From: Schmidtea polychroa
Lineage: Eukaryota
Length of the DNA stretch: 64,000 nucleotides
Assembly: GCA_044892525.1 (NCBI GenBank)
Contig: CM097888.1
Coordinates: forward strand, 34,100,001 to 34,164,000
Direction: 5' to 3'
Shown: positions 1 through 64,000 of the stretch, piece after piece
Numbering within the stretch: the first letter of the stretch is position 1
Layout of the letters: the number at the start of each line of letters is the position of its first letter
Program-made: the position numbers and the translations under genes
Notes under the pieces: generated by a model
What the model was told of the DNA's origin: nothing
The model's input: the letters and a program-made list of their open reading frames with translations, nothing else
The model's database searches: none

Positions 1-803
1 CTTTCATGCTTAATCTCTCGACACCATTCTCCACTATATTCAACATGCTCAATTACATTTTCTATGCTAATATCCTCTATTGTCGGCTTAGCGGTTGAAG
101 TAGCAATATCTAGCATTGGAATCTCCCAACTTACACTCTCATTTTCGATTAACAGTCTTTCTGATTCTTCATCCGGTTTCTGTATAGGAACTATTTCTTC
201 GACAATTTCAACAGTTTCACATTCAACTGTGCAGCAACTCAATTCAAACATCGACGACTCATCTATCACTTTCACTCCTACTGTCATTACATCGACTTCT
301 ACAGTTTCTATCATTTGATCTACTTGACTGTCTTCCATACTTATTGTATATTCACTTGAACATTCTACAATCACACTTCTGAATTCTGATCCGACCTCGA
401 CTACCTTAGAACCAACATGACTCCAACTTTCTTCAATTGATTTACATTCAAAACTGCTTTCACTATCAACTGTCTCACACATGAACTCAGTCATTGTTTC
501 TTGGAATTTTCCTACAGCTTCATGACTTGTTAATGTATCAATGAATACAATATGCTTTTCTCCGAATGTTTCGCTTCCTACTTCAATCAATTTACTCTCT
601 ACACTACTACCGAAGTCAACTGTGTCTTTGAGTTTTTCGAAAGAAACATCTGCAATTTCACTATCTTTCACTGATTCACTACTCATATCTATAGCCTCTG
701 CTTTATAGTCAGTTAACTTATTTGAAGCCTTTGTATCTTTTTCCAAGCTCGTATGTGTCAATTCGATTATTCCAGTTTCAGTTGCAATGTTTTCAGATTT
801 GAT
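1..803 (-). CDS. Exon U0 (partial, runs off window)
   Basis: Acceptor at 804/805, ATC at 803; carries KVVEV and VEVDV alleles like U2. Confidence 0.7.
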   Translation of the reverse strand, partial: MKSENIATETGIIELTHTSLEKDTKASNKLTDYKAEAIDMSSESVKDSEIADVSFEKLKDTVDFGSSVESKLIEVGSETFGEKHIVFIDTLTSHEAVGKFQETMTEFMCETVDSESSFECKSIEESWSHVGSKVVEVGSEFRSVIVECSSEYTISMEDSQVDQMIETVEVDVMTVGVKVIDESSMFELSCCTVECETVEIVEEIVPIQKPDEESERLLIENESVSWEIPMLDIATSTAKPTIEDISIENVIEHVEYSGEWCREIKHE

Positions 804-3800
804 CTAAACACGAGAAAACATTTCTTAAAAATGTCCAAAATGTTTTGTAGTGTTTTTAAACGATAATTTATTATTATAAAAAGTAATTAAAAGAAATGAA
901 TAAAAAATATGTTTAATGAAAATTTAATAAATATCATGATAAATGTATCAAACATTGCTTTAGTGCTATAAATTGTAGGAAAAAAATTAATTTTATTTAC
1001 CTCTATTTCACTGAAACATTCTTCCATTGTTGATTTCATTTCGTAGCCAGATTCCATGTTGCGAGTCTTTGTTTCTTCGAATTGTATTTCAACGGTGCAA
1101 TATTTATTGTCTTCATCTGATGATATGATGGATGTTGAATAAACTGATTTTTCTGTTTCAAACATTTCGCTTTCATGCTTAATCTCTCGACACCATTCTC
1201 CACTATATTCAACATGCTCAATTACATTTTCTATGCTAACATCCTCTATTGTCGGCTTAGCGGTTGAAGTAGCAATATCTAGCATTGGAATCTCCCAACT
1301 TACACTCTCATTTTCGATTAACAGTCTTTCTGATTCTTCATCCGGTTTCTGTATAGGAACTATTTCTTCGACAATTTCAACAGTTTCACATTCAACTGTG
1401 CAGCAACTTAATTCAAACATCGACGACTCATCTATCACTTTCACTCCTACTGTCATTACACCGACTTCTACAGTTTCTATCATTTGATCTACTTGACTGT
1501 CTTCCATACTTATTGTATATTCACTTGAACATTCTACAATCACACTTCTGAATTCTGATCCGACCTCGACTGCCTTAGAACCAACATGACTCCAACTTTC
1601 TTCAATTGATTTACATTCAAAACTGCTTTCACTATCAACTGTCTCACACATGAACTCAGTCATTGTTTCTTGGAATTTTCCTACAGCTTCATGACTTGTT
1701 AATGTATCAATGAATACAATATGCTTTTCTCCGAATGTTTCGCTTCCTACTTCAATCAATTTACTCTCTACACTACTACCGAAGTCAACTGTGTCTTTGA
1801 GTTTTTCGAAAGAAACATCTGCAATTTCACTATCTTTCACTGATTCACTACTCATATCTATAGCCTCTGCTTTATAGTCAGTTAACTTATTTGAAGCCTT
1901 TGTATCTTTTTCCAAGCTCGTATGTGTCAATTCGATTATTCCAGTTTCAGTTGCAATGTTTTCAGATTTGATCTAAACACGAGAAAACATTTCTTAAAAA
2001 TGTCCAAAATGTTTTGTAGTTTTTTTAAACGATAATTTATTATTATAAAAAGTAATTAAAAGAAATGAATAAAAAATATGTTTAATGAAAATTTAATAAA
2101 TATCATGATAAATGTATCAAACATTGCTTTAGTGCTATAAATTGTAGAAAAAAATTAATTTTATTTACCTCTATTTCACTGAAACATTCTTCCATTGTTG
2201 ATTTCATTTCGTAGCCAGATTCCATGTTTCGAGTCTGTGTTTCTTCGAATTGTATTTCAACGGTGCAATATTTAATGTCTTCATCTGATGATATGATGGT
2301 TGTTGAATAAACTGATTTTTCTGTTTCAAACATTTCGCTTTCATGCTTAATCTCTCGACACCATTCTCCACTATATTCAACAAGCTCAATTACATTTTCT
2401 ATGATAATATCCTCTATTGTCGGCTTAGCGGTTGAAGTAGCAATATCTAGCATTGGAATCTCCCAACTTACACTCTCATTTTCGATTAACAGTCTTTCTG
2501 ATTCTTCATCCGGTTTCTGTATAGGAACTATTTCTTCGACAATTTCAACAGTTTCACATTCAACTGTGCAGCAACTCAATTCAAACATCGACGACTCATC
2601 TATCACTTTCACTCCTACTGTCATTACATCGACTTCTACAGTTTCTATCATTTGATCTACTTGACTGTCTTCCATACTTATTGTATATTCACTTGAACAT
2701 TCTACAATCACACTTCTGAATTCTGATCCGACCTCGACTACCTTAGAACCAACATGACTCCAACTTTCTTCAATTGATTTACATTCAAAACTGCTTTCAC
2801 TATCAACTGTCTCACACATGAACTCAGTCATTGTTTCTTGGAATTTTCCTACAGCTTCATGACTTGTTAATGTATCAATGAATACAATATGCTTTTCTCC
2901 GAATGTTTCGCTTCCTACTTCAATCAATTTACTCTCTACACTACTACCGAAGTCAACTGTGTCTTTGAGTTTTTCGAAAGAAACATCTGCAATTTCACTA
3001 TCTTTCACTGATTCACTACTCATATCTATAGCCTCTGCTTTATAGTCAGTTAACTTATTTGAAGCCTTTGTATCTTTTTCCAAGCTCGTATGTGTCAATT
3101 CGATTATTCCAGTTTCAGTTGCAATGTTTTCAGATTTGATCTAAACACGAGAAAACATTTCTTAAAAATGTCCAAAATGTTTTGTAGTGTTTTTAAACGA
3201 TAATTTATTATTATAAAAAGTAATTAAAAGAAATGAATAAAAAATATGTTTAATGAAAATTTAATAAATATCATGATAAATGTATCAAACATTGCTTTAG
3301 TGCTATAAATTGTAGGAAAAAAATTAATTTTATTTACCTCTATTTCACTGAAACATTCTTCCATTGTTGATTTCATTTCGTAGCCAGATTCCATGTTGCG
3401 AGTCTTTGTTTCTTCGAATTGTATTTCAACGGTGCAATATTTAATGTCTTCATCTGATGATATGATGGTTGTTGAATAAACTGATTTTTCTGTTTCAAAC
3501 ATTTCGCTTTCATGCTTAATCTCTCGACACCATTCTCCACTATATTCAACATGCTCAATTACATTTTCTATGCTAATATCCTCTATTGTCGGCTTAGCGG
3601 TTGAAGTAGCAATATCTAGCATTGGAATCTCCCAACTTACACTCTCATTTTCGATTAACAGTCTTTCTGATTCTTCATCCGGTTTCTGTATAGGAACTAT
3701 TTCTTCGACAATTTCAACAGTTTCACATTCAACTGTGCAGCAACTTAATTCAAACATCGACGACTCATCTATCACTTTCACTCCTACTGTCATTACACCG

Positions 3801-6800
3801 ACTTCTACAGTTTCTATCATTTGATCTACTTGACTGTCTTCCATACTTATTGTATATTCACTTGAACATTCTACAATCACACTTCTGAATTCTGATCCGA
3901 CCTCGACTGCCTTAGAACCAACATGACTCCAACTTTCTTCAATTGATTTACATTCAAAACTGCTTTCATTATCAACTGTCTCACACATGAACTCAGTCAT
4001 TGTTTCTTGGAATTTTCCTACAGCTTCATGACTTGTTAATGTATCAATGAATACAATATGCTTTTCTCCGAATGTTTCGCTTCCTACTTCAATCAATTTA
4101 CTCTCTACACTACTACCGAAGTCAACTGTGTCTTTGAGTTTTTCGAAAGAAACATCTGCAATTTCACTATCTTTCACTGATTCACTACTCATATCTATAG
4201 CCTCTGCTTTATAGTCAGTTAACTTATTTGAAGCCTTTGTATCTTTTTCCAAGCTCGTATGTGTCAATTCGATTATTCCAGTTTCAGTTGCAATGTTTTC
4301 AGATTTGATCTAAACACGAGAAAACATTTCTTAAAAATGTCCAAAATGTTTTGTAGTTTTTTTAAACGATAATTTATTATTATAAAAAGTAATTAAAAGA
4401 AATGAATAAAAAATATGTTTAATGAAAATTTAATAAATATCATGATAAATGTATCAAACATTGCTTTAGTGCTATAAATTGTAGGAAAAAAATTAATTTT
4501 ATTTACCTCTATTTCACTGAAACATTCTTCCATTGTTGATTTCATTTCGTAGCCAGATTCCATGTTGCGAGTCTTTGTTTCTTCGAATTGTATTTCAACG
4601 GTGCAATATTTAATGTCTTCATCTGATGATATGATGGTTGTTGAATAAACTGATTTTTCTGTTTCAAACATTTCGCTTTCATGCTTAATCTCTCGACACC
4701 ATTCTCCACTATATTCAACATGCTCAATTACATTTTCTATGCTAATATCCTCTATTGTCGGCTTAGCGGTTGAAGTAGCAATATCTAGCATTGGAATCTC
4801 CCAACTTACACTCTCATTTTCGATTAACAGTCTTTCTGATTCTTCATCCGGTTTCTGTATAGGAACTATTTCTTCGACAATTTCAACAGTTTCACATTCA
4901 ACTGTGCAGCAACTTAATTCAAACATCGACGACTCATCTATCACTTTCACTCCTACTGTCATTACACCGACTTCTACAGTTTCTATCATTTGATCTACTT
5001 GACTGTCTTCCATACTTATTGTATATTCACTTGAACATTCTACAATCACACTTCTGAATTCTGATCCGAGCTCGACTGCCTTAGAACCAACATGACTCCA
5101 ACTTTCTTCAATTGATTTACATTCAAAACTGCTTTCATTATCAACTGTCTCACACATGAACTCAGTCATTGTTTCTTGGAATTTTCCTACAGCTTCATGA
5201 CTAGTTAATGTATCAATGAATACAATATGCTTTTCTCCGAATGTTTCGCTTCCTACTTCAATCAATTTACTCTCTACACTACTACCGAAGTCAACTGTGT
5301 CTTTGAGTTTTTCGAAAGAAACATCTGCAATTTCACTATCTTTCACTGATTCACTACTCATATCTATAGCCTCTGCTTTATAGTCAGTTAACTTATTTGA
5401 AGCCTTTGTATCTTTTTCCAAGCTCGTATGTGTCAATTCGATTATTCCAGTTTCAGTTGCAATGTTTTCAGATTTGATCTAAACACGAGAAAACATTTCT
5501 TAAAAATGTCCAAAATGTTTTGTAGTTTTTTTAAACGATAATTTATTATTATAAAAAGTAATTAAAAGAAATGAATAAAAAATATGTTTAATGAAAATTT
5601 AATAAATATCATGATAAATGTATCAAACATTGCTTTAGTGCTATAAATTGTAGAAAAAAATTAATTTTATTTACCTCTATTTCACTGAAACATTCTTCCA
5701 TTGTTGATTTCATTTCGTAGCCAGATTCCATGTTGCGAGTCTTTGTTTCTTCGAATTGTATTTCAACGGTGCAATATTTAATGTCTTCATCTGATGATAT
5801 GATGGTTGTTGAATAAACTGATTTTTCTGTTTCAAACATTTCGCTTTCATGCTTAATCTCTCGACACCATTCTCCACTATATTCAACATGCTCAATTACA
5901 TTTTCTATGCTAATATCCTCTATTGTCGGCTTAGCGGTTGAAGTAGCAATATCTAGCATTGGAATCTCCCAACTTACACTCTCATTTTCGATTAACAGTC
6001 TTTCTGATTCTTCATCCGGTTTCTGTATAGGAACTATTTCTTCGACAATTTCAACAGTTTCACATTCAACTGTGCAGCAACTTAATTCAAACATCGACGA
6101 CTCATCTATCACTTTCACTCCTACTGTCATTACACCGACTTCTACAGTTTCTATCATTTGATCTACTTGACTGTCTTCCATACTTATTGTATATTCACTT
6201 GAACATTCTACAATCACACTTCTGAATTCTGATCCGACCTCGACTGCCTTAGAACCAACATGACTCCAACTTTCTTCAATTGATTTACATTCAAAACTGC
6301 TTTCATTATCAACTGTCTCACACATGAACTCAGTCATTGTTTCTTGGAATTTTCCTACAGCTTCATGACTTGTTAATGTATCAATGAATACAATATGCTT
6401 TTCTCCGAATGTTTCGCTTCCTACTTCAATCAATTTACTCTCTACACTACTACCGAAGTCAACTGTGTCTTTGAGTTTTTCGAAAGAAACATCTGCAATT
6501 TCACTATCTTTCACTGATTCACTACTCATATCTATAGCCTCTGCTTTATAGTCAGTTAACTTATTTGAAGCCTTTGTATCTTTTTCCAAGCTCGTATGTG
6601 TCAATTCGATTATTCCAGTTTCAGTTGCAATGTTTTCAGATTTGATCTAAACACGAGAAAACATTTCTTAAAAATGTCCAAAATGTTTTGTAGTTTTTTT
6701 AAACGATAATTTATTATTATAAAAAGTAATTAAAAGAAATGAATAAAAAATATGTTTAATGAAAATTTAATAAATATCATGATAAATGTATCAAACATTG

Positions 6801-9800
6801 CTTTAGTGCTATAAATTGTAGAAAAAAATTAATTTTATTTACCTCTATTTCACTGAAACATTCTTCCATTGTTGATTTCATTTCGTAGCCAGATTCCATG
6901 TTGCGAGTCTTTGTTTCTTCGAATTGTATTTCAACGGTGCAATATTTAATGTCTTCATCTGATGATATGATGGTTGTTGAATAAACTGATTTTTCTGTTT
7001 CAAACATTTCGCTTTCATGCTTAATCTCTCGACACCATTCTCCACTATATTCAACATGCTCAATTACATTTTCTATGCTAATATCCTCTATTGTCGGCTT
7101 AGCGGTTGAAGTAGCAATATCTAGCATTGGAATCTCCCAACTTACACTCTCATTTTCGATTAACAGTCTTTCTGATTCTTCATCCGGTTTCTGTATAGGA
7201 ACTATTTCTTCGACAATTTCAACAGTTTCACATTCAACTGTGCAGCAACTTAATTCAAACATCGACGACTCATCTATCACTTTCACTCCTACTGTCATTA
7301 CACCGACTTCTACAGTTTCTATCATTTGATCTACTTGACTGTCTTCCATACTTATTGTATATTCACTTGAACATTCTACAATCACACTTCTGAATTCTGA
7401 TCCGAGCTCGACTGCCTTAGAACCAACATGACTCCAACTTTCTTCAATTGATTTACATTCAAAACTGCTTTCATTATCAACTGTCTCACACATGAACTCA
7501 GTCATTGTTTCTTGGAATTTTCCTACAGCTTCATGACTAGTTAATGTATCAATGAATACAATATGCTTTTCTCCGAATGTTTCGCTTCCTACTTCAATCA
7601 ATTTACTCTCTACACTACTACCGAAGTCAACTGTGTCTTTGAGTTTTTCGAAAGAAACATCTGCAATTTCACTATCTTTCACTGATTCACTACTCATATC
7701 TATAGCCTCTGCTTTATAGTCAGTTAACTTATTTGAAGCCTTTGTATCTTTTTCCAAGCTCGTATGTGTCAATTCGATTATTCCAGTTTCAGTTGCAATG
7801 TTTTCAGATTTGATCTAAACACGAGAAAACATTTCTTAAAAATGTCCAAAATGTTTTGTAGTTTTTTTAAACGATAATTTATTATTATAAAAAGTAATTA
7901 AAAGAAATGAATAAAAAATATGTTTAATGAAAATTTAATAAATATCATGATAAATGTATCAAACATTGCTTTAGTGCTATAAATTGTAGAAAAAAATTAA
8001 TTTTATTTACCTCTATTTCACTGAAACATTCTTCCATTGTTGATTTCATTTCGTAGCCAGATTCCATGTTGCGAGTCTTTGTTTCTTCGAATTGTATTTC
8101 AACGGTGCAATATTTAATGTCTTCATCTGATGATATGATGGTTGTTGAATAAACTGATTTTTCTGTTTCAAACATTTCGCTTTCATGCTTAATCTCTCGA
8201 CACCATTCTCCACTATATTCAACATGCTCAATTACATTTTCTATGCTAATATCCTCTATTGTCGGCTTAGCTGTTGAAGTAGCAATATCTAGCATTGGAA
8301 TCTCCCAACTTACACTCTCATTTTCGATTAACAGTCTTTCTGATTCTTCATCCGGTTTCTGTATAGGAACTATTTCTTCGACAATTTCAACAGTTTCACA
8401 TTCAACTGTGCAGCAACTCAATTCAAACATCGACGACTCATCTATCACTTTCACTCCTACTGTCATTACACCGACTTCTACAGTTTCTATCATTTGATCT
8501 ACTTGACTGTCTTCCATACTTATTGTATATTCACTTGAACATTCTACAATCACACTTCTGAATTCTGATCCGACCTCGACTGCCTTAGAACCAACATGAC
8601 TCCAACTTTCTTCAATTGATTTACATTCAAAACTGCTTTCACTATCAACTGTCTCACACATGAACTCAGTCATTGTTTCTTGGAATTTTCCTACAGCTTC
8701 ATGACTTGTTAATGTATCAATGAATACAATATGCTTTTCTCCGAATGTTTCGCTTCCTACTTCAATCAATTTACTCTCTACACTACTACCGAAGTCAACT
8801 GTGTCTTTGAGTTTTTCGAAAGAAACATCTGCAATTTCACTATCTTTCACTGATTCACTACTCATATCTATAGCCTCTGCTTTATAGTCAGTTAACTTAT
8901 TTGAAGCCTTTGTATCTTTTTCCAAGCTCGTATGTGTCAATTCGATTATTCCAGTTTCAGTTGCAATGTTTTCAGATTTGATCTAAACACGAGAAAACAT
9001 TTCTTAAAAATGTCCAAAATGTTTTGTAGTTTTTTTAAACGATAATTTATTATTATAAAAAGTAATTAAAAGAAATGAATAAAAAATATGTTTAATGAAA
9101 ATTTAATAAATATCATGATAAATGTATCAAACATTGCTTTAGTGCTATAAATTGTAGAAAAAAATTAATTTTATTTACCTCTATTTCACTGAAACATTCT
9201 TCCATTGTTGATTTCATTTCGTAGCCAGATTCCATGTTGCGAGTCTTTGTTTCTTCGAATTGTATTTCAACGGTGCAATATTTAATGTCTTCATCTGATG
9301 ATATGATGGTTGTTGAATAAACTGATTTTTCTGTTTCAAACATTTCGCTTTCATGCTTAATCTCTCGACACCATTCTCCACTATATTCAACATGCTCAAT
9401 TACATTTTCTATGCTAATATCCTCTATTGTCGGCTTAGCTGTTGAAGTAGCAATATCTAGCATTGGAATCTCCCAACTTACACTCTCATTTTCGATTAAC
9501 AGTCTTTCTGATTCTTCATCCGGTTTCTGTATAGGAACTATTTCTTCGACAATTTCAACAGTTTCACATTCAACTGTGCAGCAACTCAATTCAAACATCG
9601 ACGACTCATCTATCACTTTCACTCCTACTGTCATTACACCGACTTCTACAGTTTCTATCATTTGATCTACTTGACTGTCTTCCATACTTATTGTATATTC
9701 ACTTGAACATTCTACAATCACACTTCTGAATTCTGATCCGACCTCGACTGCCTTAGAACCAACATGACTCCAACTTTCTTCAATTGATTTACATTCAAAA

Positions 9801-54800: not shown

Positions 54801-57800
54801 TTGTTTCTTCGAATTGTATTTCAACGGTGCAATATTTAATGTCTTCATCTGATGATATGATGGTTGTTGAATAAACTGATTTTTCTGTTTCAAACATTTC
54901 GCTTTCATGCTTAATCTCTCGACACCATTCTCCACTATATTCAACATGCTCAATTACATTTTCTATGCTAATATCCTCTATTGTCGGCTTAGCGGTTGAA
55001 GTAGCAATATCTAGCATTGGAATCTCCCAACTTACACTCTCATTTTCGATTAACAGTCTTTCTGATTCTTCATCCGGTTTCTGTATAGGAACTATTTCTT
55101 CGACAATTTCAACAGTTTCACTTTCAACTGTGCAGCAACTCAATTCAAACATCGACGACTCATCTATCACTTTCACTCCTACTGTCATTACACCGACTTC
55201 TACAGTTTCTATCATTTGATCTACTTGACTGTCTTCCATACTTATTGTATATTCACTTGAACATTCTACAATCACACTTCTGAATTCTGATCCGACCTCG
55301 ACTGCCTTAGAACCAACATGACTCCAACTTTCTTCAATTGATTTACATTCAAAACTGCTTTCACTATCAACTGTCTCACACATGAACTCAGTCATTGTTT
55401 CTTGGAATTTTCCTACAGCTTCATGACTTGTTAATGTATCAATGAATACAATATGCTTTTCTCCGAATGTTTCGCTTCCTACTTCAATCAATTTACTCTC
55501 TACACTACTACCGAAGTCAACTGTGTCTTTGAGTTTTTCGAAAGAAACATCTGCAATTTCACTATCTTTCACTGATTCACTACTCATATCTATAGCCTCT
55601 GCTTTATAGTCAGTTAACTTATTTGAAGCCTTTGTATCTTTTTCCAAGCTCGTATGTGTCAATTCGATTATTCCAGTTTCAGTTGCAATGTTTTCAGATT
55701 TGATCTAAACACGAGAAAATATTTCTTAAAAGTGTTCAAAATGTTTTGTAGATTTGTTTAAACGATAATTTATCATTATAAAAAGTGATTTAAAGAAATG
55801 AATAAAAAATATGTTTAATGAAAATTTAATAAATATCATGATAAATGTATCAAATATTGCTTTAGTGCTATAAATTGTAGAAAAAAATTAATTTTATTTA
55901 CCTCTATTTCACTGAAACATTCTTCCATTGTTGATTTCATTTCGTAGCCAGATTCCATGTTGTGAGTCTTTGTTTCTTCGAATTGTATTTCAACGGTGCA
56001 ATATTTAATGTCTTCATCTGATGATATGATGGTTGTTGAATAAACTGATTTTTCTGTTTCAAACATTTCGCTTTCATGCTTAATCTCTCGACACCATTCT
56101 CCACTATATTCAACATGCTCAATTACATTTTCTATGCTAATATCCTCTATTGTCGGCTTAGCTGTTGAAGTAGCAATATCTAGCATTGGAATCTCCCAAC
56201 TTACACTCTCATTTTCGATTAACAGTCTTTCTGATTCTTCATCCGGTTTCTGTATAGGAACTATTTCTTCGACAATTTCAACAGTTTCACATTCAACTGT
56301 GCAGCAACTCAATTCAAACATCGACGACTCATCTATCACTTTCACTCCTACTGTCATTACACCGACTTCTACAGTTTCTATCATTTGATCTACTTGACTG
56401 TCTTCCATACTTATTGTATATTCACTTGAACATTCTACAATCACACTTCTGAATTCTGATCCGACCTCGACTGCCTTAGAACCAACATGACTCCAACTTT
56501 CTTCAATTGATTTACATTCAAAACTGCTTTCACTATCAACTGTCTCACACATGAACTCAGTCATTGTTTCTTGGAATTTTCCTACAGCTTCATGACTAGT
56601 TAATGTATCAATGAATACAATATGCTTTTCTCCGAATGTTTCGCTTCCTACTTCAATATATTTACTCTCTACACTACTACCGAAGTCAACTGTGTCTTTG
56701 AGTTTTTCGAAAGAAACATCTGCAATTTCACTATCTTTCACTGATTCACTACTCATATCTATAGCCTCTGCTTTATAGTCAGTTAACTTATTTGAAGCCT
56801 TTGTATCTTTTTCCAAGCTCGTATGTGTCAATTCGATTATTCCAGTTTCAGTTGCAATGTTTTCAGATTTGATCTAAACACGAGAAAACATTTCTTAAAA
56901 ATGTCCAAAATGTTTTGTAGTTTTTTTAAACGATAATTTATTATTATAAAAAGTAATTAAAAGAAATGAATAAAAAATATGTTTAATGAAAATTTAATAA
57001 ATATCATGATAAATGTATCAAACATTGCTTTAGTGTTATAAATTGTAGGAAAAAAATTAATTTTATTTACCTCTATTTCACTGAAACATTCTTCCATTGT
57101 TGATTTCATTTCGTAGCCAGATTCCATGTTGTGAGTCTTTGTTTCTTCGAATTGTATTTCAACGGTGCAATATTTAATGTCTTCATCTGATGATATGATG
57201 GTTGTTGAATAAACTGATTTTTCTGTTTCAAACATTTCGCTTTCATGCTTAATCTCTCGACACCATTCTCCACTATATTCAACATGCTCAATTACATTTT
57301 CTATGCTAATATCCTCTATTGTCGGCTTAGCTGTTGAAGTAGCAATATCTAGCATTGGAATCTCCCAACTTACACTCTCATTTTCGATTAACAGTCTTTC
57401 TGATTCTTCATCCGGTTTCTGTATAGGAACTATTTCTTCGACAATTTCAACAGTTTCACTTTCAACTGTGCAGCAACTCAATTCAAACATCGACGACTCA
57501 TCTATCACTTTCACTCCTACTGTCATTACACCGACTTCTACAGTTTCTATCATTTGATCTACTTGACTGTCTTCCATACTTATTGTATATTCACTTGAAC
57601 ATTCTACAATCACACTTCTGAATTCTGATCCGACCTCGACTGCCTTAGAACCAACATGACTCCAACTTTCTTCAATTGATTTACATTCAAAACTGCTTTC
57701 ACTATCAACTGTCTCACACATGAACTCAGTCATTGTTTCTTGGAATTTTCCTACAGCTTCATGACTAGTTAATGTATCAATGAATACAATATGCTTTTCT

Positions 57801-60800
57801 CCGAATGTTTCGCTTCCTACTTCAATATATTTACTCTCTACACTACTACCGAAGTCAACTGTGTCTTTGAGTTTTTCGAAAGAAACATCTGCAATTTCAC
57901 TATCTTTCACTGATTCACTACTCATATCTATAGCCTCTGCTTTATAGTCAGTTAACTTATTTGAAGCCTTTGTATCTTTTTCCAAGCTCGTATGTGTCAA
58001 TTCGATTATTCCAGTTTCAGTTGCAATGTTTTCAGATTTGATCTAAACACGAGAAAACATTTCTTAAAAATGTCCAAAATGTTTTGTAGTTTTTTTAAAC
58101 GATAATTTATTATTATAAAAAGTAATTAAAAGAAATGAATAAAAAATATGTTTAATGAAAATTTAATAAATATCATGATAAATGTATCAAACATTGCTTT
58201 AGTGTTATAAATTGTAGGAAAAAAATTAATTTTATTTACCTCTATTTCACTGAAACATTCTTCCATTGTTGATTTCATTTCGTAGCCAGATTCCATGTTG
58301 TGAGTCTTTGTTTCTTCGAATTGTATTTCAACGGTGCAATATTTAATGTCTTCATCTGATGATATGATGGTTGTTGAATAAACTGATTTTTCTGTTTCAA
58401 ACATTTCGCTTTCATGCTTAATCTCTCGACACCATTCTCCACTATATTCAACATGCTCAATTACATTTTCTATGCTAATATCCTCTATTGTCGGCTTAGC
58501 TGTTGAAGTAGCAATATCTAGCATTGGAATCTCCCAACTTACACTCTCATTTTCGATTAACAGTCTTTCTGATTCTTCATCCGGTTTCTGTATAGGAACT
58601 ATTTCTTCGACAATTTCAACAGTTTCACTTTCAACTGTGCAGCAACTCAATTCAAACATCGACGACTCATCTATCACTTTCACTCCTACTGTCATTACAC
58701 CGACTTCTACAGTTTCTATCATTTGATCTACTTGACTGTCTTCCATACTTATTGTATATTCACTTGAACATTCTACAATCACACTTCTGAATTCTGATCC
58801 GACCTCGACTGCCTTAGAACCAACATGACTCCAACTTTCTTCAATTGATTTACATTCAAAACTGCTTTCACTATCAACTGTCTCACACATGAACTCAGTC
58901 ATTGTTTCTTGGAATTTTCCTACAGCTTCATGACTTGTTAATGTATCAATGAATACAATATGCTTTTCTCCGAATGTTTCGCTTCCTACTTCAATCAATT
59001 TACTCTCTACACTACTACCGAAGTCAACTGTGTCTTTGAGTTTTTCGAAAGAAACATCTGCAATTTCACTATCTTTCACTGATTCACTACTCATATCTAT
59101 AGCCTCTGCTTTATAGTCAGTTAACTTATTTGAAGCCTTTGTATCTTTTTCCAAGCTCGTATGTGTCAATTCGATTATTCCAGTTTCAGTTGCAATGTTT
59201 TCAGATTTGATCTAAACACGAGAAAACATTTCTTAAAAGTGTTCAAAATGTTTTGTAGATTTGTTTAAACGATAATTTATCATTATAAAAAGTGATTTAA
59301 AGAAATGAATAAAAAATATGTTTAATGAAAATTTAATAAATATCATGATAAATGTATCAAATATTGCTTTAGTGCTATAAATTGTAGAAAAAAATTAATT
59401 TTATTTACCTCTATTTCACTGAAACATTCTTCCATTGTTGATTTCATTTCGTAGCCAGATTCCATGTTGCGAGTCTTTGTTTCTTCGAATTGTATTTCAA
59501 CGGTGCAATATTTAATGTCTTCATCTGATGATATGATGGTTGTTGAATAAACTGATTTTTCTGTTTCAAACATTTCGCTTTCATGCTTAATCTCTCGACA
59601 CCATTCTCCACTATATTCAACATGCTCAATTACATTTTCTATGCTAATATCCTCTATTGTCGGCTTAGCTGTTGAAGTAGCAATATCTAGCATTGGAATC
59701 TCCCAACTTACACTCTCATTTTCGATTAACAGTCTTTCTGATTCTTCATCCGGTTTCTGTATAGGAACTATTTCTTCGACAATTTCAACAGTTTCACATT
59801 CAACTGTGCAGCAACTCAATTCAAACATCGACGACTCATCTATCACTTTCACTCCTACTGTCATTACACCGACTTCTACAGTTTCTATCATTTGATCTAC
59901 TTGACTGTCTTCCATACTTATTGTATATTCACTTGAACATTCTACAATCACACTTCTGAATTCTGATCCGACCTCGACTGCCTTAGAACCAACATGACTC
60001 CAACTTTCTTCAATTGATTTACATTCAAAACTGCTTTCACTATCAACTGTCTCACACATGAACTCAGTCATTGTTTCTTGGAATTTTCCTACAGCTTCAT
60101 GACTAGTTAATGTATCAATGAATACAATATGCTTTTCTCCGAATGTTTCGCTTCCTACTTCAATATATTTACTCTCTACACTACTACCGAAGTCAACTGT
60201 GTCTTTGAGTTTTTCGAAAGAAACATCTGCAATTTCACTATCTTTCACTGATTCACTACTCATATCTATAGCCTCTGCTTTATAGTCAGTTAACTTATTT
60301 GAAGCCTTTGTATCTTTTTCCAAGCTCGTATGTGTCAATTCGATTATTCCAGTTTCAGTTGCAATGTTTTCAGATTTGATCTAAACACGAGAAAACATTT
60401 CTTAAAAATGTCCAAAATGTTTTGTAGTTTTTTTAAACGATAATTTATTATTATAAAAAGTAATTAAAAGAAATGAATAAAAAATATGTTTAATGAAAAT
60501 TTAATAAATATCATGATAAATGTATCAAACATTGCTTTAGTGTTATAAATTGTAGGAAAAAAATTAATTTTATTTACCTCTATTTCACTGAAACATTCTT
60601 CCATTGTTGATTTCATTTCGTAGCCAGATTCCATGTTGTGAGTCTTTGTTTCTTCGAATTGTATTTCAACGGTGCAATATTTAATGTCTTCATCTGATGA
60701 TATGATGGTTGTTGAATAAACTGATTTTTCTGTTTCAAACATTTCGCTTTCATGCTTAATCTCTCGACACCATTCTCCACTATATTCAACATGCTCAATT

Positions 60801-63800
60801 ACATTTTCTATGCTAATATCCTCTATTGTCGGCTTAGCTGTTGAAGTAGCAATATCTAGCATTGGAATCTCCCAACTTACACTCTCATTTTCGATTAACA
60901 GTCTTTCTGATTCTTCATCCGGTTTCTGTATAGGAACTATTTCTTCGACAATTTCAACAGTTTCACTTTCAACTGTGCAGCAACTCAATTCAAACATCGA
61001 CGACTCATCTATCACTTTCACTCCTACTGTCATTACACCGACTTCTACAGTTTCTATCATTTGATCTACTTGACTGTCTTCCATACTTATTGTATATTCA
61101 CTTGAACATTCTACAATCACACTTCTGAATTCTGATCCGACCTCGACTGCCTTAGAACCAACATGACTCCAACTTTCTTCAATTGATTTACATTCAAAAC
61201 TGCTTTCACTATCAACTGTCTCACACATGAACTCAGTCATTGTTTCTTGGAATTTTCCTACAGCTTCATGACTTGTTAATGTATCAATGAATACAATATG
61301 CTTTTCTCCGAATGTTTCGCTTCCAACTTCAATCAATTTACTCTCTACACTACTACCGAAGTCAACTGTGTCTTTGAGTTTTTCGAAAGAAACATCTGCA
61401 ATTTCACTATCTTTCACTGATTCACTACTCATATCTATAGCCTCTGCTTTATAGTCAGTTAACTTATTTGAAGCCTTTGTATCTTTTTCCAAGCTCGTAT
61501 GTGTCAATTCGATTATTCCAGTTTCAGTTGCAATGTTTTCAGATTTGATCTAAACACGAGAAAACATTTCTTAAAAATGTCCAAAATGTTTTGTAGTTTT
61601 TTTAAACGATAATTTATTATTATAAAAAGTAATTAAAAGAAATGAATAAAAAATATGTTTAATGAAAATTTAATAAATATCATGATAAATGTATCAAACA
61701 TTGCTTTAGTGCTATAAATTGTAGAAAAAAATTAATTTTATTTACCTCTATTTCACTGAAACATTCTTCCATTGTTGATTTCATTTCGTAGCCAGATTCC
61801 ATGTTGCGAGTCTTTGTTTCTTCGAATTGTATTTCAACGGTGCAATATTTAATGTCTTCATCTGATGATATGATGGTTGTTGAATAAACTGATTTTTCTG
61901 TTTCAAACATTTCGCTTTCATGCTTAATCTCTCGACACCATTCTCCACTATATTCAACATGCTCAATTACATTTTCTATGCTAATATCCTCTATTGTCGG
62001 CTTAGCGGTTGAAGTAGCAATATCTAGCATTGGAATCTCCCAACTTACACTCTCATTTTCGATTAACAGTCTTTCTGATTCTTCATCCGGTTTCTGTATA
62101 GGAACTATTTCTTCGACAATTTCAACAGTTTCACATTCAACTGTGCAGCAACTCAATTCAAACATCGACGACTCATCTATCACTTTCACTCCTACTGTCA
62201 TTACACCGACTTCTACAGTTTCTATCATTTGATCTACTTGACTGTCTTCCATACTTATTGTATATTCACTTGAACATTCTACAATCACACTTCTGAATTC
62301 TGATCCGACCTCGACTGCCTTAGAACCAACATGACTCCAACTTTCTTCAATTGATTTACATTCAAAACTGCTTTCACTATCAACTGTCTCACACATGAAC
62401 TCAGTCATTGTTTCTTGGAATTTTCCTACAGCTTCATGACTTGTTAATGTATCAATGAATACAATATGCTTTTCTCCGAATGTTTCGCTTCCTACTTCAA
62501 TCAATTTACTCTCTACACTACTACCGAAGTCAACTGTGTCTTTGAGTTTTTCGAAAGAAACTTCTGCAATTTCACTATCTTTCACTGATTCACTACTCAT
62601 ATCTATAGCCTCTGCTTTATAGTCAGTTAACTTATTTGAAGCCTTTGTATCTTTTTCCAAGCTCGTATGTGTCAATTCGATTATTCCAGTTTCAGTTGCA
62701 ATGTTTTCAGATTTGATCTAAACACGAGAAAACATTTCTTAAAAATGTCCAAAATGTTTTGTAGTTTTTTTAAACGATAATTTATTATTATAAAATGTAA
62801 TTAAAAGAAATGAATAAAAAATATGTTTAATGAAAATTTAATAAATATCATGATAAATGTATCAAACATTGCTTTAGTGCTATAAATTGTAGAAAAAAAT
62901 TAATTTTATTTACCTCTATTTCACTGAAACATTCTTCCATTGTTGATTTCATTTCGTAGCCAGATTCCATGTTGTGAGTCTTTGTTTCTTCGAATTGTAT
63001 TTCAACGGTGCAATATTTAATGTCTTCATCTGATGATATGATGGTTGTTGAATAAACTGATTTTTCTGTTTCAAACATTTCGCTTTCATGCTTAATCTCT
63101 CGACACCATTCTCCACTATATTCAACATGCTCAATTACATTTTCTATGCTAATATCCTCTATTGTCGGCTTAGCGGTTGAAGTAGCAATATCTAGCATTG
63201 GAATCTCCCAACTTACACTCTCATTTTCGATTAACAGTCTTTCTGATTCTTCATCCGGTTTCTGTATAGGAACTATTTCTTCGACAATTTCAACAGTTTC
63301 ACATTCAACTGTGCAGCAACTCAATTCAAACATCGACAACTCATCTATCACTTTCACTCCTACTGTCATTACACCGACTTCTACAGTTTCTATCATTTGA
63401 TCTACTTGACTGTCTTCCATACTTATTGTATATTCACTTGAACATTCTACAATCACACTTCTGAATTCTGATCCGACCTCGACTGCCTTAGAACCAACAT
63501 GACTCCAACTTTCTTCAATTGATTTACATTCAAAACTGCTTTCACTATCAACTGTCTCACACATGAACTCAGTCATTGTTTCTTGGAATTTTCCTACAGC
63601 TTCATGACTTGTTAATGTATCAATGAATACAATATGCTTTTCTCCGAATGTTTCGCTTCCTACTTCAATCAATTTACTCTCTACACTACTACCGAAGTCA
63701 ACTGTGTCTTTGAGTTTTTCGAAAGAAACTTCTGCAATTTCACTATCTTTCACTGATTCACTACTCATATCTATAGCCTCTGCTTTATAGTCAGTTAACT

Positions 63801-63885
63801 TATTTGAAGCCTTTGTATCTTTTTCCAAGCTCGTATGTGTCAATTCGATTATTCCAGTTTCAGTTGCAATGTTTTCAGATTTGAT
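1..63885 (-). CDS. Interior of a giant multi-exon gene: 54 complete 972-nt phase-0 exons plus a partial one, encoding tandem 324-aa acidic E/S/T/V/I-rich repeats (uncharacterised; 5' and 3' ends outside window)
   Basis: Every unit has acceptor TTTTCTCGTGTTTAG|ATC AAA TCT (IKSENIATETGIIELTHTSLEK...) and donor ...GAA ATA GAG|GTAAAT (...MEECFSEIE). 972 = 324x3, so joins stay in frame. No stop or indel seen in any exon; GC falls from about 35% to about 18% at the junctions. Splicing is inferred, not observed. Confidence 0.8.
804..1000 (-). other. Repeated GT-AG intron (representative, 197 nt; 196 nt in most units)
   Basis: Minus strand begins GTAAATAAAATT at 1000 and ends GTGTTTAG at 804; 35 G+C in 197 nt. 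The same intron lies between every pair of exons listed. Confidence 0.8.
1001..1972 (-). CDS. Exon U1, 324-aa repeat
   Basis: AG/GT bounded; private I>N, T>S, I>V. Confidence 0.75.
2169..3140 (-). CDS. Exon U2
   Basis: AG/GT bounded; A>V, G>D, S>I, H>L, K>Q. Confidence 0.75.
3338..4309 (-). CDS. Exon U3
   Basis: AG/GT bounded; S>N. Confidence 0.75.
4507..5478 (-). CDS. Exon U4
   Basis: AG/GT bounded; S>N, V>L. Confidence 0.75.
5675..6646 (-). CDS. Exon U5
   Basis: AG/GT bounded; S>N. Confidence 0.75.
6843..7814 (-). CDS. Exon U6
   Basis: AG/GT bounded; S>N, V>L. Confidence 0.75.
8011..8982 (-). CDS. Exon U7
   Basis: AG/GT bounded; consensus protein. Confidence 0.75.
9179..10150 (-). CDS. 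Exon U8
   Basis: AG/GT bounded; F>L. Confidence 0.75.
10347..11318 (-). CDS. Exon U9
   Basis: AG/GT bounded; G>D, T>N. Confidence 0.75.
11516..12487 (-). CDS. Exon U10
   Basis: AG/GT bounded; consensus protein. Confidence 0.75.
12684..13655 (-). CDS. Exon U11
   Basis: AG/GT bounded; G>D. Confidence 0.75.
13853..14824 (-). CDS. Exon U12
   Basis: AG/GT bounded; G>D, S>C at exon codon 3. Confidence 0.75.
15021..15992 (-). CDS. Exon U13
   Basis: AG/GT bounded; consensus protein. Confidence 0.75.
16189..17160 (-). CDS. Exon U14
   Basis: AG/GT bounded; G>D. Confidence 0.75.
17357..18328 (-). CDS. Exon U15
   Basis: AG/GT bounded; G>D. Confidence 0.75.
18525..19496 (-). CDS. Exon U16
   Basis: AG/GT bounded; consensus protein. 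Confidence 0.75.
19693..20664 (-). CDS. Exon U17
   Basis: AG/GT bounded; consensus protein. Confidence 0.75.
20861..21832 (-). CDS. Exon U18
   Basis: AG/GT bounded; consensus protein. Confidence 0.75.
22029..23000 (-). CDS. Exon U19
   Basis: AG/GT bounded; E>G, R>H. Confidence 0.75.
23197..24168 (-). CDS. Exon U20
   Basis: AG/GT bounded; R>H. Confidence 0.75.
24365..25336 (-). CDS. Exon U21
   Basis: AG/GT bounded; R>H. Confidence 0.75.
25533..26504 (-). CDS. Exon U22
   Basis: AG/GT bounded; R>H. Confidence 0.75.
26701..27672 (-). CDS. Exon U23
   Basis: AG/GT bounded; consensus protein. Confidence 0.75.
27869..28840 (-). CDS. Exon U24
   Basis: AG/GT bounded; C>S, R>H. Confidence 0.75.
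29037..30008 (-). CDS. Exon U25
   Basis: AG/GT bounded; RNM>HKL. Confidence 0.75.
30205..31176 (-). CDS. Exon U26
   Basis: AG/GT bounded; R>H. Confidence 0.75.
31373..32344 (-). CDS. Exon U27
   Basis: AG/GT bounded; R>H. Confidence 0.75.
32541..33512 (-). CDS. Exon U28
   Basis: AG/GT bounded; consensus protein. Confidence 0.75.
33709..34680 (-). CDS. Exon U29
   Basis: AG/GT bounded; C>S, R>H. Confidence 0.75.
34877..35848 (-). CDS. Exon U30
   Basis: AG/GT bounded; RNM>HKL. Confidence 0.75.
36045..37016 (-). CDS. Exon U31
   Basis: AG/GT bounded; F>K, R>H. Confidence 0.75.
37213..38184 (-). CDS. Exon U32
   Basis: AG/GT bounded; R>H. Confidence 0.75.
38381..39352 (-). CDS. Exon U33
   Basis: AG/GT bounded; consensus protein. 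Confidence 0.75.
39549..40520 (-). CDS. Exon U34
   Basis: AG/GT bounded; consensus protein. Confidence 0.75.
40717..41688 (-). CDS. Exon U35
   Basis: AG/GT bounded; C>S, R>H. Confidence 0.75.
41885..42856 (-). CDS. Exon U36
   Basis: AG/GT bounded; consensus protein. Confidence 0.75.
43053..44024 (-). CDS. Exon U37
   Basis: AG/GT bounded; consensus protein. Confidence 0.75.
44221..45192 (-). CDS. Exon U38
   Basis: AG/GT bounded; K>M. Confidence 0.75.
45389..46360 (-). CDS. Exon U39
   Basis: AG/GT bounded; consensus protein. Confidence 0.75.
46557..47528 (-). CDS. Exon U40
   Basis: AG/GT bounded; G>D, E>D. Confidence 0.75.
47725..48696 (-). CDS. Exon U41
   Basis: AG/GT bounded; C>S, R>H. 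Confidence 0.75.
48893..49864 (-). CDS. Exon U42
   Basis: AG/GT bounded; C>S, R>H. Confidence 0.75.
50061..51032 (-). CDS. Exon U43
   Basis: AG/GT bounded; C>S, V>G, R>H. Confidence 0.75.
51229..52200 (-). CDS. Exon U44
   Basis: AG/GT bounded; D>E. Confidence 0.75.
52397..53368 (-). CDS. Exon U45
   Basis: AG/GT bounded; C>S, R>H. Confidence 0.75.
53565..54536 (-). CDS. Exon U46
   Basis: AG/GT bounded; D>E. Confidence 0.75.
54733..55704 (-). CDS. Exon U47
   Basis: AG/GT bounded; C>S, R>H. Confidence 0.75.
55705..55901 (-). other. Divergent intron allele, copy 1
   Basis: About 9 differences from consensus intron including a 1-nt insertion; GT/AG ends intact. Confidence 0.85.
55902..56873 (-). 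CDS. Exon U48
   Basis: AG/GT bounded; L>Y, R>H. Confidence 0.75.
57071..58042 (-). CDS. Exon U49 (chimeric)
   Basis: AG/GT bounded; L>Y, C>S, R>H. Confidence 0.75.
58240..59211 (-). CDS. Exon U50
   Basis: AG/GT bounded; C>S, R>H. Confidence 0.75.
59212..59408 (-). other. Divergent intron allele, copy 2
   Basis: Same variants as 55705-55901 except the one nearest the acceptor (gagaaaac rather than gagaaaat). Confidence 0.85.
59409..60380 (-). CDS. Exon U51
   Basis: AG/GT bounded; L>Y. Confidence 0.75.
60578..61549 (-). CDS. Exon U52
   Basis: AG/GT bounded; C>S, R>H. Confidence 0.75.
61746..62717 (-). CDS. Exon U53
   Basis: AG/GT bounded; D>E. Confidence 0.75.
62914..63885 (-). CDS. Exon U54 (most 5' complete exon in window)
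   Basis: AG/GT bounded; D>E, S>L, R>H. Confidence 0.75.
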
Positions 63886-64000
63886 CTAAACACGAGAAAA
63901 CATTTCTTAAAAATGTCCAAAATGTTTTGTAGATTTTTTAAACGATAATTTATTATTATAAAAAGTAATTAAAAGAAATGAATAAAAAATATGTTTAATG
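63886..64000 (-). other. 3' part of repeated intron, truncated by window edge
   Basis: Acceptor GTGTTTAG ends at 63886; matches the other introns, with a gtagattttt variant. Confidence 0.7.

What the first reader, a model, noticed from the sequence alone, without database searches (positions are those of the whole stretch)
1..63885. What looks like a satellite or gene array is probably one titin-scale gene built from more than 54 near-identical exon+intron cassettes
Seen: each unit has a 972-nt frame that opens exactly at a pyrimidine-rich TAG| acceptor (the acceptor's TAG is the upstream in-frame stop) and switches to F/I/N/K-rich AT junk exactly at a GAG|GTAAAT donor. Both junctions are phase 0 and GC drops from about 35% to about 18% across them. 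Inference: splicing gives at least 53 kb of continuous CDS, 54x324 = 17,496 aa plus 267 aa, with no end in sight. Known precedents for iterated exon-intron units are LPA kringle IV-2, the titin and nebulin triplicated regions, NBPF/Olduvai arrays and the spider flagelliform spidroin gene. More than 54 copies of a 324-aa exon at about 99% identity is extreme, and I do not recognise the sequence as any of these.
Basis: partly seen in the sequence, partly recalled or inferred. Interest (0 to 1): 0.9.

Follow-up and report, generated by a model that had tools for sequence, protein, structure and literature searches.

The report
Giant gene of 54+ identical spliced exons
The whole window is one stretch of a real, transcribed and spliced animal gene. 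At least 54 almost identical 972-letter exons, each followed by a 196-letter intron, join in frame into a very acidic protein of at least 17,500 residues that matches no known family.

Summary
The minus strand carries 54 complete units of 1168/1169 nt. Each unit is a 972-nt open exon (GC 35.5%) followed by a 196/197-nt intron (GC 16.8%) running GTAAAT...TTTAG. Both junctions are phase 0, exon copies are 99.6% identical, and the array runs off both ends of the window.

- Contigs from two independent RNA studies skip exactly the 196 nt, giving the predicted junction FSEIE-IKSENIA.
- The RNA runs hold none of the intron words, while DNA-type runs do.
- A UniParc protein (P0011) shows the same junction, followed by a unique in-frame 539-aa tail.
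- Homologues at 34-72% identity from about ten other, probably planarian, collapsed arrays keep the same splice sites and phase.
- Between species, exon dN/dS is 0.14-0.26 and the introns are unalignable.

Not shown: that all units sit in one transcript, the total copy number, the 5' end, translation, and function. The 324-aa unit (net charge -52, 9 Cys) has no Pfam, PDB or fold match.

The architecture is a known kind, like the LPA KIV-2 coding repeat, at extreme scale. The protein family is undescribed. An earlier scan note names the genome Schmidtea mediterranea; I did not verify that here.

The parts
1..64000 (-). Part of one tandem array: 54 complete exon+intron cassettes plus a partial one at each end. 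Period 1168/1169 nt. The gene reads from high to low coordinates.
63886..64000 (-). Last 115 nt of an upstream intron, so the array continues beyond the window on the gene's 5' side.
   Evidence: the first event on the minus strand is an acceptor at offset 115.
62914..63885 (-). Exon 0: 972 nt, 324 codons, phase 0 at both ends.
   Evidence: Used as the protein query.
62718..62913 (-). Intron 0: 196 nt, GTAAAT...TTTAG. Removed in RNA.
   Evidence: the X1 contig joins 62717 to 62914. RNA runs hold 0.00 of its words; no stable fold (z 0.23); no Rfam match.
61746..62717 (-). Exon 1. A single 1002-nt RNA contig covers all of it and carries the previous exon's last 29 nt in front.
   Evidence: table 8, record 1 of run X1 (972 + 30 nt, as expected for an exon-to-exon cyclic repeat at word size 31).
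61550..61745 (-). Intron 1: 196 nt. Removed in RNA, and present unspliced in a DNA-type run.
   Evidence: the X4 contig joins 61549 to 61746 with 117 nt on the shorter side. X15 contig 3 runs straight through it.
60578..61549 (-). Exon 2.
1001..1972 (-). Exon 53, the last complete exon in the window.
804..1000 (-). Intron after exon 53: the 197-nt variant with an inserted C.
1..803 (-). First 803 nt (267 codons) of the next exon, so the array continues beyond the window on the gene's 3' side.
30009..35848 (-). Five-unit block (exons 24-28 with their introns), first copy of a perfect duplication.
   Evidence: 5840 of 5840 nt identical to 24169-30008. The pattern is visible.
24169..30008 (-). 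Five-unit block (exons 29-33), second copy of the perfect duplication.
59212..59408 (-). Diverged intron type with 8 linked differences including a 1-nt insertion. It is also found at 55705-55901.

Best explanation
The window is an internal stretch of one very large protein-coding gene on the minus strand.

Shown:
- The unit is a symmetric phase-0 exon of 972 nt plus a canonical GT-AG intron of 196 nt.
- Neighbouring exons are spliced to each other in RNA, and the intron is absent from RNA.
- The same exon, with the same splice positions and phase, occurs as a collapsed tandem array in about ten other species' DNA. Between species the exon is under purifying selection and the intron is free to change in both sequence and length.

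Inferred:
- The array is kept uniform by unequal crossing-over or gene conversion, that is, concerted evolution. Units within a species are 90-99.6% alike, and units between species 34-72%. A perfect 5-unit duplication shows the process is recent.
- Because every cassette is a whole number of codons, any gain, loss or skipping of cassettes stays in frame. Copy number can therefore drift like a coding minisatellite.
- The product is a chain of at least 54 copies of a 324-aa module, possibly about 80-100 copies. Each module is 18.5% Glu and 13% Ser, with net charge -52, pI 4.2, 9 Cys and 4 Pro.
- If P0011 is this gene's 3' end, the chain ends in a unique acidic tail.

My best guess at function is a giant polyanionic structural or scaffold protein, more likely intracellular than secreted (about 60:40). 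The reasons are that only 3 of the 9 Cys are nearly invariant, the single N-glycosylation sequon is not conserved, there is no mucin-like Pro/Thr tract, and the P0011 tail carries periodic TQT and GVQT motifs of the kind that bind dynein light chain LC8. The function is inference only.
For: Anatomy.

Splicing:
- One search shows joints that skip 196 nt, with GT..AG ends on the minus strand, in X1 (study P1) and X4 (study P2). The intron bins have depth 0 there. The X1 contig is 972 + 30 nt.
- intron-only words score 0.00 in RNA runs X1-X4 and X6. They score 0.20-0.80 in DNA-labelled holders, including freshwater and sediment metagenomes, and in holders of unknown library type. One of that study's runs, X15, holds the intron unspliced.

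Protein record: P0011 contains FSEIE-IKSENIA between two non-identical units (they differ, for example, at LEDIS versus LEHIS), then a unique in-frame tail.

Conservation:
- 10 homologues at E-values of 1e-34 to 1e-120, from contigs about one unit long.
- Every homologue reads on into V(N/Y/I)F... at the same column, which marks the donor GT.
- AG|AT acceptors and GAG/GAA/AAG|GTAA donors are conserved. Where both boundaries were located, exons are 969-978 nt. The implied units are 1115-1818 nt, and contig ends overlap.
- dN/dS is 0.26, 0.14 and 0.17 between species, and 0.23-0.28 between neighbouring units of L002.
- Intron identity between the window and L003 is 64%, against 61 +/- 1.5% for shuffled sequence. 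Exon identity is 79%.

Other points:
- No frameshift or stop in 54 x 972 nt, while both indel variants lie in the intron.
- No plus-strand ORF.
- Published S. mediterranea annotations list longest transcripts of 76,733 and 94,201 nt in the two haplotypes, against 28-36 kb in three sister species (PMC11410931, Table 1). The difference is 17.97 x 972 nt. This is a lead only.
Against: - No read or contig spans more than one junction, so a single transcript through all units is not shown.
- Contigs of identical exons cannot tell linear exon N to exon N+1 splicing from back-splicing.
- The 5' end, start codon and any signal peptide were not seen.
- P0011's units are only 89-92% identical to the window's. 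None of its 32 differences occurs in any window unit, so it may come from the array's edge, another strain or a sister species. No contig for it is on record.
- Variants among window copies look neutral, 28:7 against an expected 28.3:6.7.
- AlphaFold2 gives no fold (pLDDT 32 and 33), and no family, PDB or Atlas match exists. The function is therefore guesswork.
- The TQT motifs are in P0011, not in the window.
Confidence: 0.8

Rival explanations
1. The gene is real and spliced, but the products are heterogeneous and mostly much shorter than the array. Internal starts, premature polyadenylation or extensive exon skipping would give a ladder of proteins with few to many units, not one titin-scale chain. 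All such products stay in frame because the exons are symmetric.
For: - Every exon is phase 0-0, so skipping costs nothing.
- AATAAA lies directly after each donor (GTAAATAAAA).
- No evidence here spans more than one junction.
Against: - The intron, which carries that AATAAA, is absent from the RNA runs.
- Published annotations of the presumed species contain transcripts of 77-94 kb, though these are not tied to this locus.
Confidence: 0.2
2. The exon-exon junction comes from back-splicing of single exons, giving 972-nt circular RNAs, rather than from linear splicing of neighbours.
For: The X1 contig is exactly one exon closed on itself (972 + 30 nt). A circle would give the same contig.
Against: - A collapsed linear repeat gives the same contig.
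- P0011 joins two different units and then a unique tail in one chain.
- Protein-level purifying selection across species is not expected for a non-coding circle.
Confidence: 0.04
3. This is a non-coding satellite that happens to be transcribed and to contain splice-like sites, and the open frame is an accident of recent amplification.
For: - Copies are 99.6% identical, so 54 open frames are not 54 independent tests.
- Within-array N:S is neutral.
- The unit has no recognisable domain or fold.
Against: - The frame is open, with the same boundaries, in about ten diverged arrays at 34-72% identity.
- dN/dS is 0.14-0.28.
- Intron sequence and length are unconstrained.
- The described S. mediterranea satellites have units of 158, 159 and 424-766 bp (PMC13309565).
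Confidence: 0.02
4. The copy number or order in the window is an assembly artefact, an over-expanded or mis-ordered repeat.
For: A 5840-nt block is repeated with 100% identity, which could be an assembler stutter.
Against: - Variants are ordered in local neighbourhoods along the array, as expected for a resolved array.
- A DNA-type contig confirms the unspliced unit, including the 197-nt intron variant.
- Collapsed single-unit contigs in many other samples show the tandem arrangement is genuine.
Confidence: 0.07

Closest known systems
Human LPA kringle IV type 2 coding copy-number repeat
   Same: Tandem cassettes of whole exons plus introns inside one gene. They are spliced in frame and the copies are 98-100% identical. 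Copy number sets protein length (PMC4378929).
   Different: LPA units are 5.5 kb with two small exons (160 and 182 bp), in 1 to more than 40 copies, and encode a known kringle domain. Here the unit is 1.17 kb with one 972-nt exon that makes up 83% of it. There are at least 54 copies and the module is unknown. Allelic copy-number variation was not tested here.
Spider flagelliform silk (Flag) gene and other iterated-exon structural genes (titin and nebulin repeat regions). From my own knowledge: Hayashi & Lewis 2000 for Flag.
   Same: Long structural proteins built from iterated exon-intron units homogenised together, introns included.
   Different: Those have far fewer and less identical cassettes, and recognisable motifs or domains (GPGGX silk motifs, Ig/Fn3, nebulin repeats). 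Pfam finds none of these here.
Satellite DNAs of Schmidtea mediterranea (158mer, 159mer, pericentromeric units of 424-766 bp)
   Same: Highly homogeneous tandem arrays in the same presumed genome (PMC13309565).
   Different: Those are short non-coding units in megabase gene deserts. This is a 1168-nt unit that is transcribed, spliced and under protein-level selection.
Giant repetitive flatworm adhesive proteins (Macrostomum Mlig-ap1 and ap2; PMC6410801, which appeared only as a search hit and was not read)
   Same: Very large, repetitive, flatworm-specific proteins.
   Different: From my own knowledge, those carry known extracellular domains or Lys/Arg-rich repeats. This module is strongly acidic and has no Pfam domain. 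No sequence relation was found in any search.
Multivalent LC8 (DYNLL) clients such as ASCIZ (PMC5963919, PMC10046861; both appeared only as search hits and were not read)
   Same: The tail of P0011 has 4 TQT motifs and 10 [TVIS]Q[TVI] motifs against 2.1 expected, spaced about 71 aa apart in a disordered acidic region.
   Different: This is a motif resemblance only, found in a database protein outside the window. Binding is untested and the repeat module itself lacks the motif.

Membership tests
Intragenic coding exon-intron cassette array (LPA KIV-2 type) | Each tandem unit contains whole exon(s) plus intron(s) with canonical splice sites | tested here: met
   54 units of 972-nt exon plus 196/197-nt intron, GTAAAT...TTTAG.
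Intragenic coding exon-intron cassette array (LPA KIV-2 type) | Cassettes keep the reading frame when joined | tested here: met
   All exons are 324 codons, phase 0-0, with no stops. Homologous exons are 969-978 nt wherever both boundaries were located.
Intragenic coding exon-intron cassette array (LPA KIV-2 type) | Units are spliced to each other in mRNA | tested here: met
   RNA contigs skip exactly 196 nt in two studies. RNA runs hold no intron words. P0011 carries the junction.
Intragenic coding exon-intron cassette array (LPA KIV-2 type) | Unique flanking exons that complete one gene | tested here: inconclusive
   P0011 shows a unique in-frame 3' tail, but it is not placed on this genome. 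The 5' end was not seen, and the window lies wholly inside the array.
Intragenic coding exon-intron cassette array (LPA KIV-2 type) | Copy number varies between alleles | not testable with these tools
   The only lead is that the longest annotated transcripts of the two haplotypes differ by 17,468 nt, which is 17.97 x 972.
Titin / connectin-like muscle giants | Ig-like and fibronectin type III domain repeats, and a kinase domain | tested here: not met
   No Pfam family at E up to 1. No PDB sequence match. Only the size is titin-like.
Non-coding satellite DNA | No conserved reading frame and no protein-level selection | tested here: not met
   The frame and its boundaries are conserved at 34-72% identity. 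dN/dS is 0.14-0.28.
Gel-forming mucins and secreted adhesive giants | Pro/Thr/Ser-rich tracts, VWD/C8/TIL or similar Cys-rich domains, a signal peptide | tested here: inconclusive
   The module has 1.2% Pro, no Pfam domain, and only 3 of 9 Cys nearly invariant. These points argue against membership, but the N-terminus and any signal peptide were not seen.
Multivalent LC8/DYNLL-binding proteins | Several TQT-type anchor motifs in disordered sequence, with shown binding | tested here: inconclusive
   Motifs are enriched and periodic in the P0011 tail. They are absent from the repeat module. Binding cannot be tested here.

The most novel reading that the evidence does not exclude
The gene encodes one continuous chain of roughly 80-100 modules, about 25,000-31,000 residues and about 3 MDa. 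That would make it one of the largest proteins of any animal. Copy number would differ between haplotypes like a coding minisatellite. The family would be planarian-specific, conserved yet constantly re-homogenised, and would act as a giant polyanionic intracellular filament, perhaps bundled through LC8 sites in its tail.
Probability: 0.25. Interest if true: 0.8.

Novelty: new variant of a known kind. Interest (0 to 1): 0.62.

Why it matters
This would be the most extreme example I know of a coding exon-intron cassette array. It has at least 54 copies (LPA reaches a little over 40), each cassette encodes 324 residues, and copies are 99.6% identical including their introns.

It offers a natural system for three questions:
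- How the spliceosome pairs dozens of identical donors and acceptors in the right order.
- How concerted evolution and purifying selection act together on one gene.
- How assemblies and annotations treat coding "satellites".

It also defines an unstudied protein family, probably confined to planarians, that short-read transcriptomes and metagenomes collapse into a single unit. One RNAi trigger against the 972-nt exon would hit every unit, so function is directly testable in a planarian.

Tried and rejected
- **Tandem Repeats Finder** found nothing relevant, because its longest period is 500.
- **Family and structure searches on the module** gave nothing: Pfam, NCBIfam, a PDB profile search and the ESM Atlas. 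The best Atlas score was 0.72 at low recognition.
- **AlphaFold2**, run twice with 12 and 17 aligned sequences, gave pLDDT 32 and 33. No fold search was worth running.
- **Internal sub-repeats** of about 100 aa are only hinted at: hhalign probability 42-62%, and a self-alignment score within the range of shuffled sequences.
- **A snoRNA or other structured RNA in the intron** is rejected: no Rfam match at E up to 1, and a fold z-score of 0.23.
- **S-x-E (Fam20C-type) motifs** are only mildly enriched, 13 against 8.0 expected, p about 0.04. I dropped this as evidence.
- **The exon-versus-intron variant density test** (Fisher p = 0.011) is discounted, because 8 of the 18 intron columns come from one diverged intron type.
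- **L001**, which seemed to put the module next to bacterial genes, is a chimeric metagenome scaffold. Its GC jumps from 0.35-0.38 to 0.53-0.63.
- **The metagenome locus scan** added only one locus.
- **P0011** has no encoding contig on record, and its tail has no homologues.
- **The scan's own notes** hold nothing for P0011's sequence.
- **Literature searches** for a planarian giant, repeated-exon or acidic repeat gene found no description.
- **The supplements of the genome paper** do not mention a 1168-nt monomer.
- **Human filaggrin** also has 324-aa repeats (from my own knowledge). Those lie in one exon and are basic, so the match in length is a coincidence.
Full report
**What is in the sequence**

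The whole window is one tandem array that reads on the minus strand. Two anchor words, GAAATAGAG|GTAAAT and TAG|ATCAAATCTGAA, recur 54 times each at spacings of 1168 or 1169 nt. They cut the array into 54 complete exons of exactly 972 nt and 54 introns of 196 nt (44 copies) or 197 nt (10 copies).

- No exon has a stop or a frameshift.
- The codon just upstream of every exon is the acceptor's TAG. Reading through the donor gives VNKINFF... and soon a stop.
- GC is 0.355 in the exon and 0.168 in the intron.
- Mean exon identity is 99.63%.
- The window starts 803 nt into an exon and ends 115 nt into an intron, so the array continues on both sides.
- The plus strand has no ORF of 150 aa or more.

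**Fine structure of the array**

Variants are not scattered at random. Neighbouring units share them. Window 24169-30008 is a perfect copy (5840 of 5840 nt) of 30009-35848, a five-unit duplication. A diverged intron type with eight linked differences sits after exons 3 and 6. This is the signature of ongoing unequal exchange.

Variation inside the array says nothing about selection. Non-synonymous to synonymous changes are 28:7, against 28.3:6.7 expected by chance. The higher variant density in the intron is driven by that single diverged intron type. The only within-array hint of coding constraint is that both indel variants lie in the intron and none in 54 x 972 nt of exon.

**Is it spliced?**

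Yes. I laid Logan contigs of four runs on window 60578-63885.

- Two RNA-labelled runs from different studies each hold a contig that skips exactly 196 nt. X4 joins 61549 to 61746 (117 nt on the shorter side). X1 joins 62717 to 62914. The skipped ends are CT..AC on the plus strand, which is GT..AG on the minus strand.
- The X1 contig is 1002 nt, that is 972 + 30. A chain of exon joined to exon collapses to this at word size 31.
- The intron bins have depth 0 in the RNA runs.
- Run X15 holds a 1138-nt contig that goes straight through intron 1, so it contains genomic DNA and serves as the unspliced control.

As a second test I queried the run index with intron-only sequence. RNA runs X1-X4 and X6 held 0.32-0.55 of the words of the exon+intron stretch, but they hold 0.00 of the intron words. 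The runs that do hold intron words are DNA-labelled runs, several freshwater and sediment metagenomes, and runs of unknown library type. They hold 0.20-0.80.

**Independent protein record**

A profile search of 1.84 billion representative proteins found eight relatives. One of them, P0011, is a 1003-aa UniParc entry. It reads:

- the last 140 residues of a unit;
- the predicted junction ...CFSEIE|IKSENIA...;
- a complete unit, 89% identical to the window's;
- ...CFSEIE|FKNTIF..., followed by a unique acidic tail of 539 aa.

Its two units differ from each other, so the record is a linear chain ending in a unique in-frame 3' part.

There are caveats. No contig for P0011 is on record. None of its 32 differences from the window consensus occurs in any window unit. 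It may represent the less homogenised edge of this array, another strain or a sister species.

**Conservation elsewhere**

The module has ten homologues at 34-70% identity (E-values 1e-34 to 1e-120). Nearly all come from metagenome or Logan contigs of 1.1-1.35 kb, which is one unit long.

- In the alignment every homologue runs on into V(N/Y/I)F... at the same column. That column is the donor GT.
- At the DNA level, L002-L009 keep the AG|AT acceptor and the GAG/GAA/AAG|GTAA donor. Where both boundaries were located, exons are 969-978 nt, always a multiple of three.
- Contig ends overlap by the assembler's word length, so the contigs are collapsed tandem arrays with units of 1115, 1192, 1201, 1290 and 1818 nt. 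L002's 2499 nt holds two diverged units.
- Implied intron lengths run from about 146 nt to about 849 nt.
- dN/dS is 0.26 (window vs L003), 0.14 (window vs L002) and 0.17 (L003 vs L002). Between neighbouring units inside L002 it is 0.23-0.28.
- The window and L003 introns are 64% identical, no better than shuffled sequence at 61 +/- 1.5%. The exons are 79% identical.

The frame is therefore a protein under purifying selection. The exon boundaries are old, and each species' array has been homogenised separately, which is concerted evolution.

**What the protein looks like**

One module has 60 Glu, 43 Ser, 30 Ile, 29 Val and 28 Thr. Its net charge is -52 and its pI 4.2, with 9 Cys and 4 Pro. Conserved blocks include IDMSSE, FEK.KDTVDF, SVE..IEVG.E.FGEK, DTLTSHE, CSSEY, IEHVE.S.EW, HESE.FETEK and YCTV.IQFEE.

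It matches no Pfam or NCBIfam family, no PDB sequence and no convincing Atlas cluster. AlphaFold2 gives pLDDT 32-33 with 12 or 17 aligned sequences. Hints of a threefold internal period of about 100 aa are weak.

Only three Cys are nearly invariant, and the single N-glycosylation sequon is not conserved. With so little Pro, this speaks against a mucin-like or disulfide-rich secreted module. The N-terminus is unseen, so secretion is not excluded.

P0011's tail carries 4 TQT motifs and 10 [TVIS]Q[TVI] motifs (2.1 expected), at a period of about 71 aa and paired with RS.G/A.Q. The anchor is the kind that dynein light chain LC8 binds in multivalent clients. That is my own knowledge; papers on multivalent LC8 clients turned up in the search but I did not read them. 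It is a lead towards an intracellular scaffold, nothing more.

**Which organism, and is it known?**

The AT-richness and the freshwater metagenome hits fit, but I did not verify it.

The published satellites of that species have units of 158, 159, 424, 544, 693 and 766 bp (PMC13309565), so none matches the 1168-nt unit. The genome paper's Table 1 lists longest transcripts of 76,733 and 94,201 nt in the two haplotypes, against 28-36 kb in three sister species (PMC11410931). The difference is 17,468 nt, or 17.97 x 972. That fits this gene being annotated with about 79 and about 97 exons, but I could not check it. Six literature searches found no description of such a gene.

**Verdict**

"One titin-scale protein" remains an inference. 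It rests on symmetric exons, clean intron removal, a record with a terminal tail, and the absence of any sign of unit-length transcripts. Back-splicing, heterogeneous shorter isoforms and assembly inflation are not excluded but have little support.

The architecture is a known kind. LPA KIV-2 has 5.5-kb units with two exons, in 1 to more than 40 copies (PMC4378929). This array takes the design to an extreme, and the protein family is undescribed.

Noticed in passing
P0011 residues 465-1003 (database protein, outside the window): The unique acidic tail (net charge -71) holds 4 TQT and 10 [TVIS]Q[TVI] motifs against 2.1 expected. They recur about every 71 aa together with RS.G/A.Q. This resembles multivalent LC8/DYNLL-binding regions.
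   Followed up: partly
window 24169-30008 and 30009-35848: A five-unit (5840-nt) block is duplicated with 100% identity. It is either a very recent unequal exchange or an assembler stutter.
   Followed up: partly
window 59212-59408 and 55705-55901: Two introns share a diverged type with eight linked differences. This looks like an older variant that survived homogenisation or was moved by conversion.
   Followed up: no
L001:1-4966: A metagenome scaffold joins 780 nt of the module (GC 0.35-0.38) to bacterial-looking genes (Wzy_C, polysaccharide deacetylase; GC 0.53-0.63). It is almost certainly a chimeric scaffold, not gene transfer.
   Followed up: partly
window 62722-62909 (intron-only query): Near-identical intron words occur in freshwater, lake-water and sediment metagenomes. 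The multicopy array could therefore serve as a sensitive environmental-DNA marker for this animal or its close kin.
   Followed up: no
L005:1-1959: In one distant homologue the implied unit is 1818 nt, with an intron of about 849 nt, against 146-316 nt in the others. The extra sequence was not examined.
   Followed up: no
every intron, first 12 nt (for example window 62902-62913, minus strand): The donor context GTAAATAAAA contains AATAAA. An unspliced transcript would meet a polyadenylation-like signal straight after each exon.
   Followed up: no
PMC11410931, Table 1 (literature, not sequence): The longest annotated transcripts of the two S. mediterranea haplotypes differ by 17,468 nt, which is 17.97 x 972. 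This may reflect an 18-unit copy-number difference at this gene.
   Followed up: no
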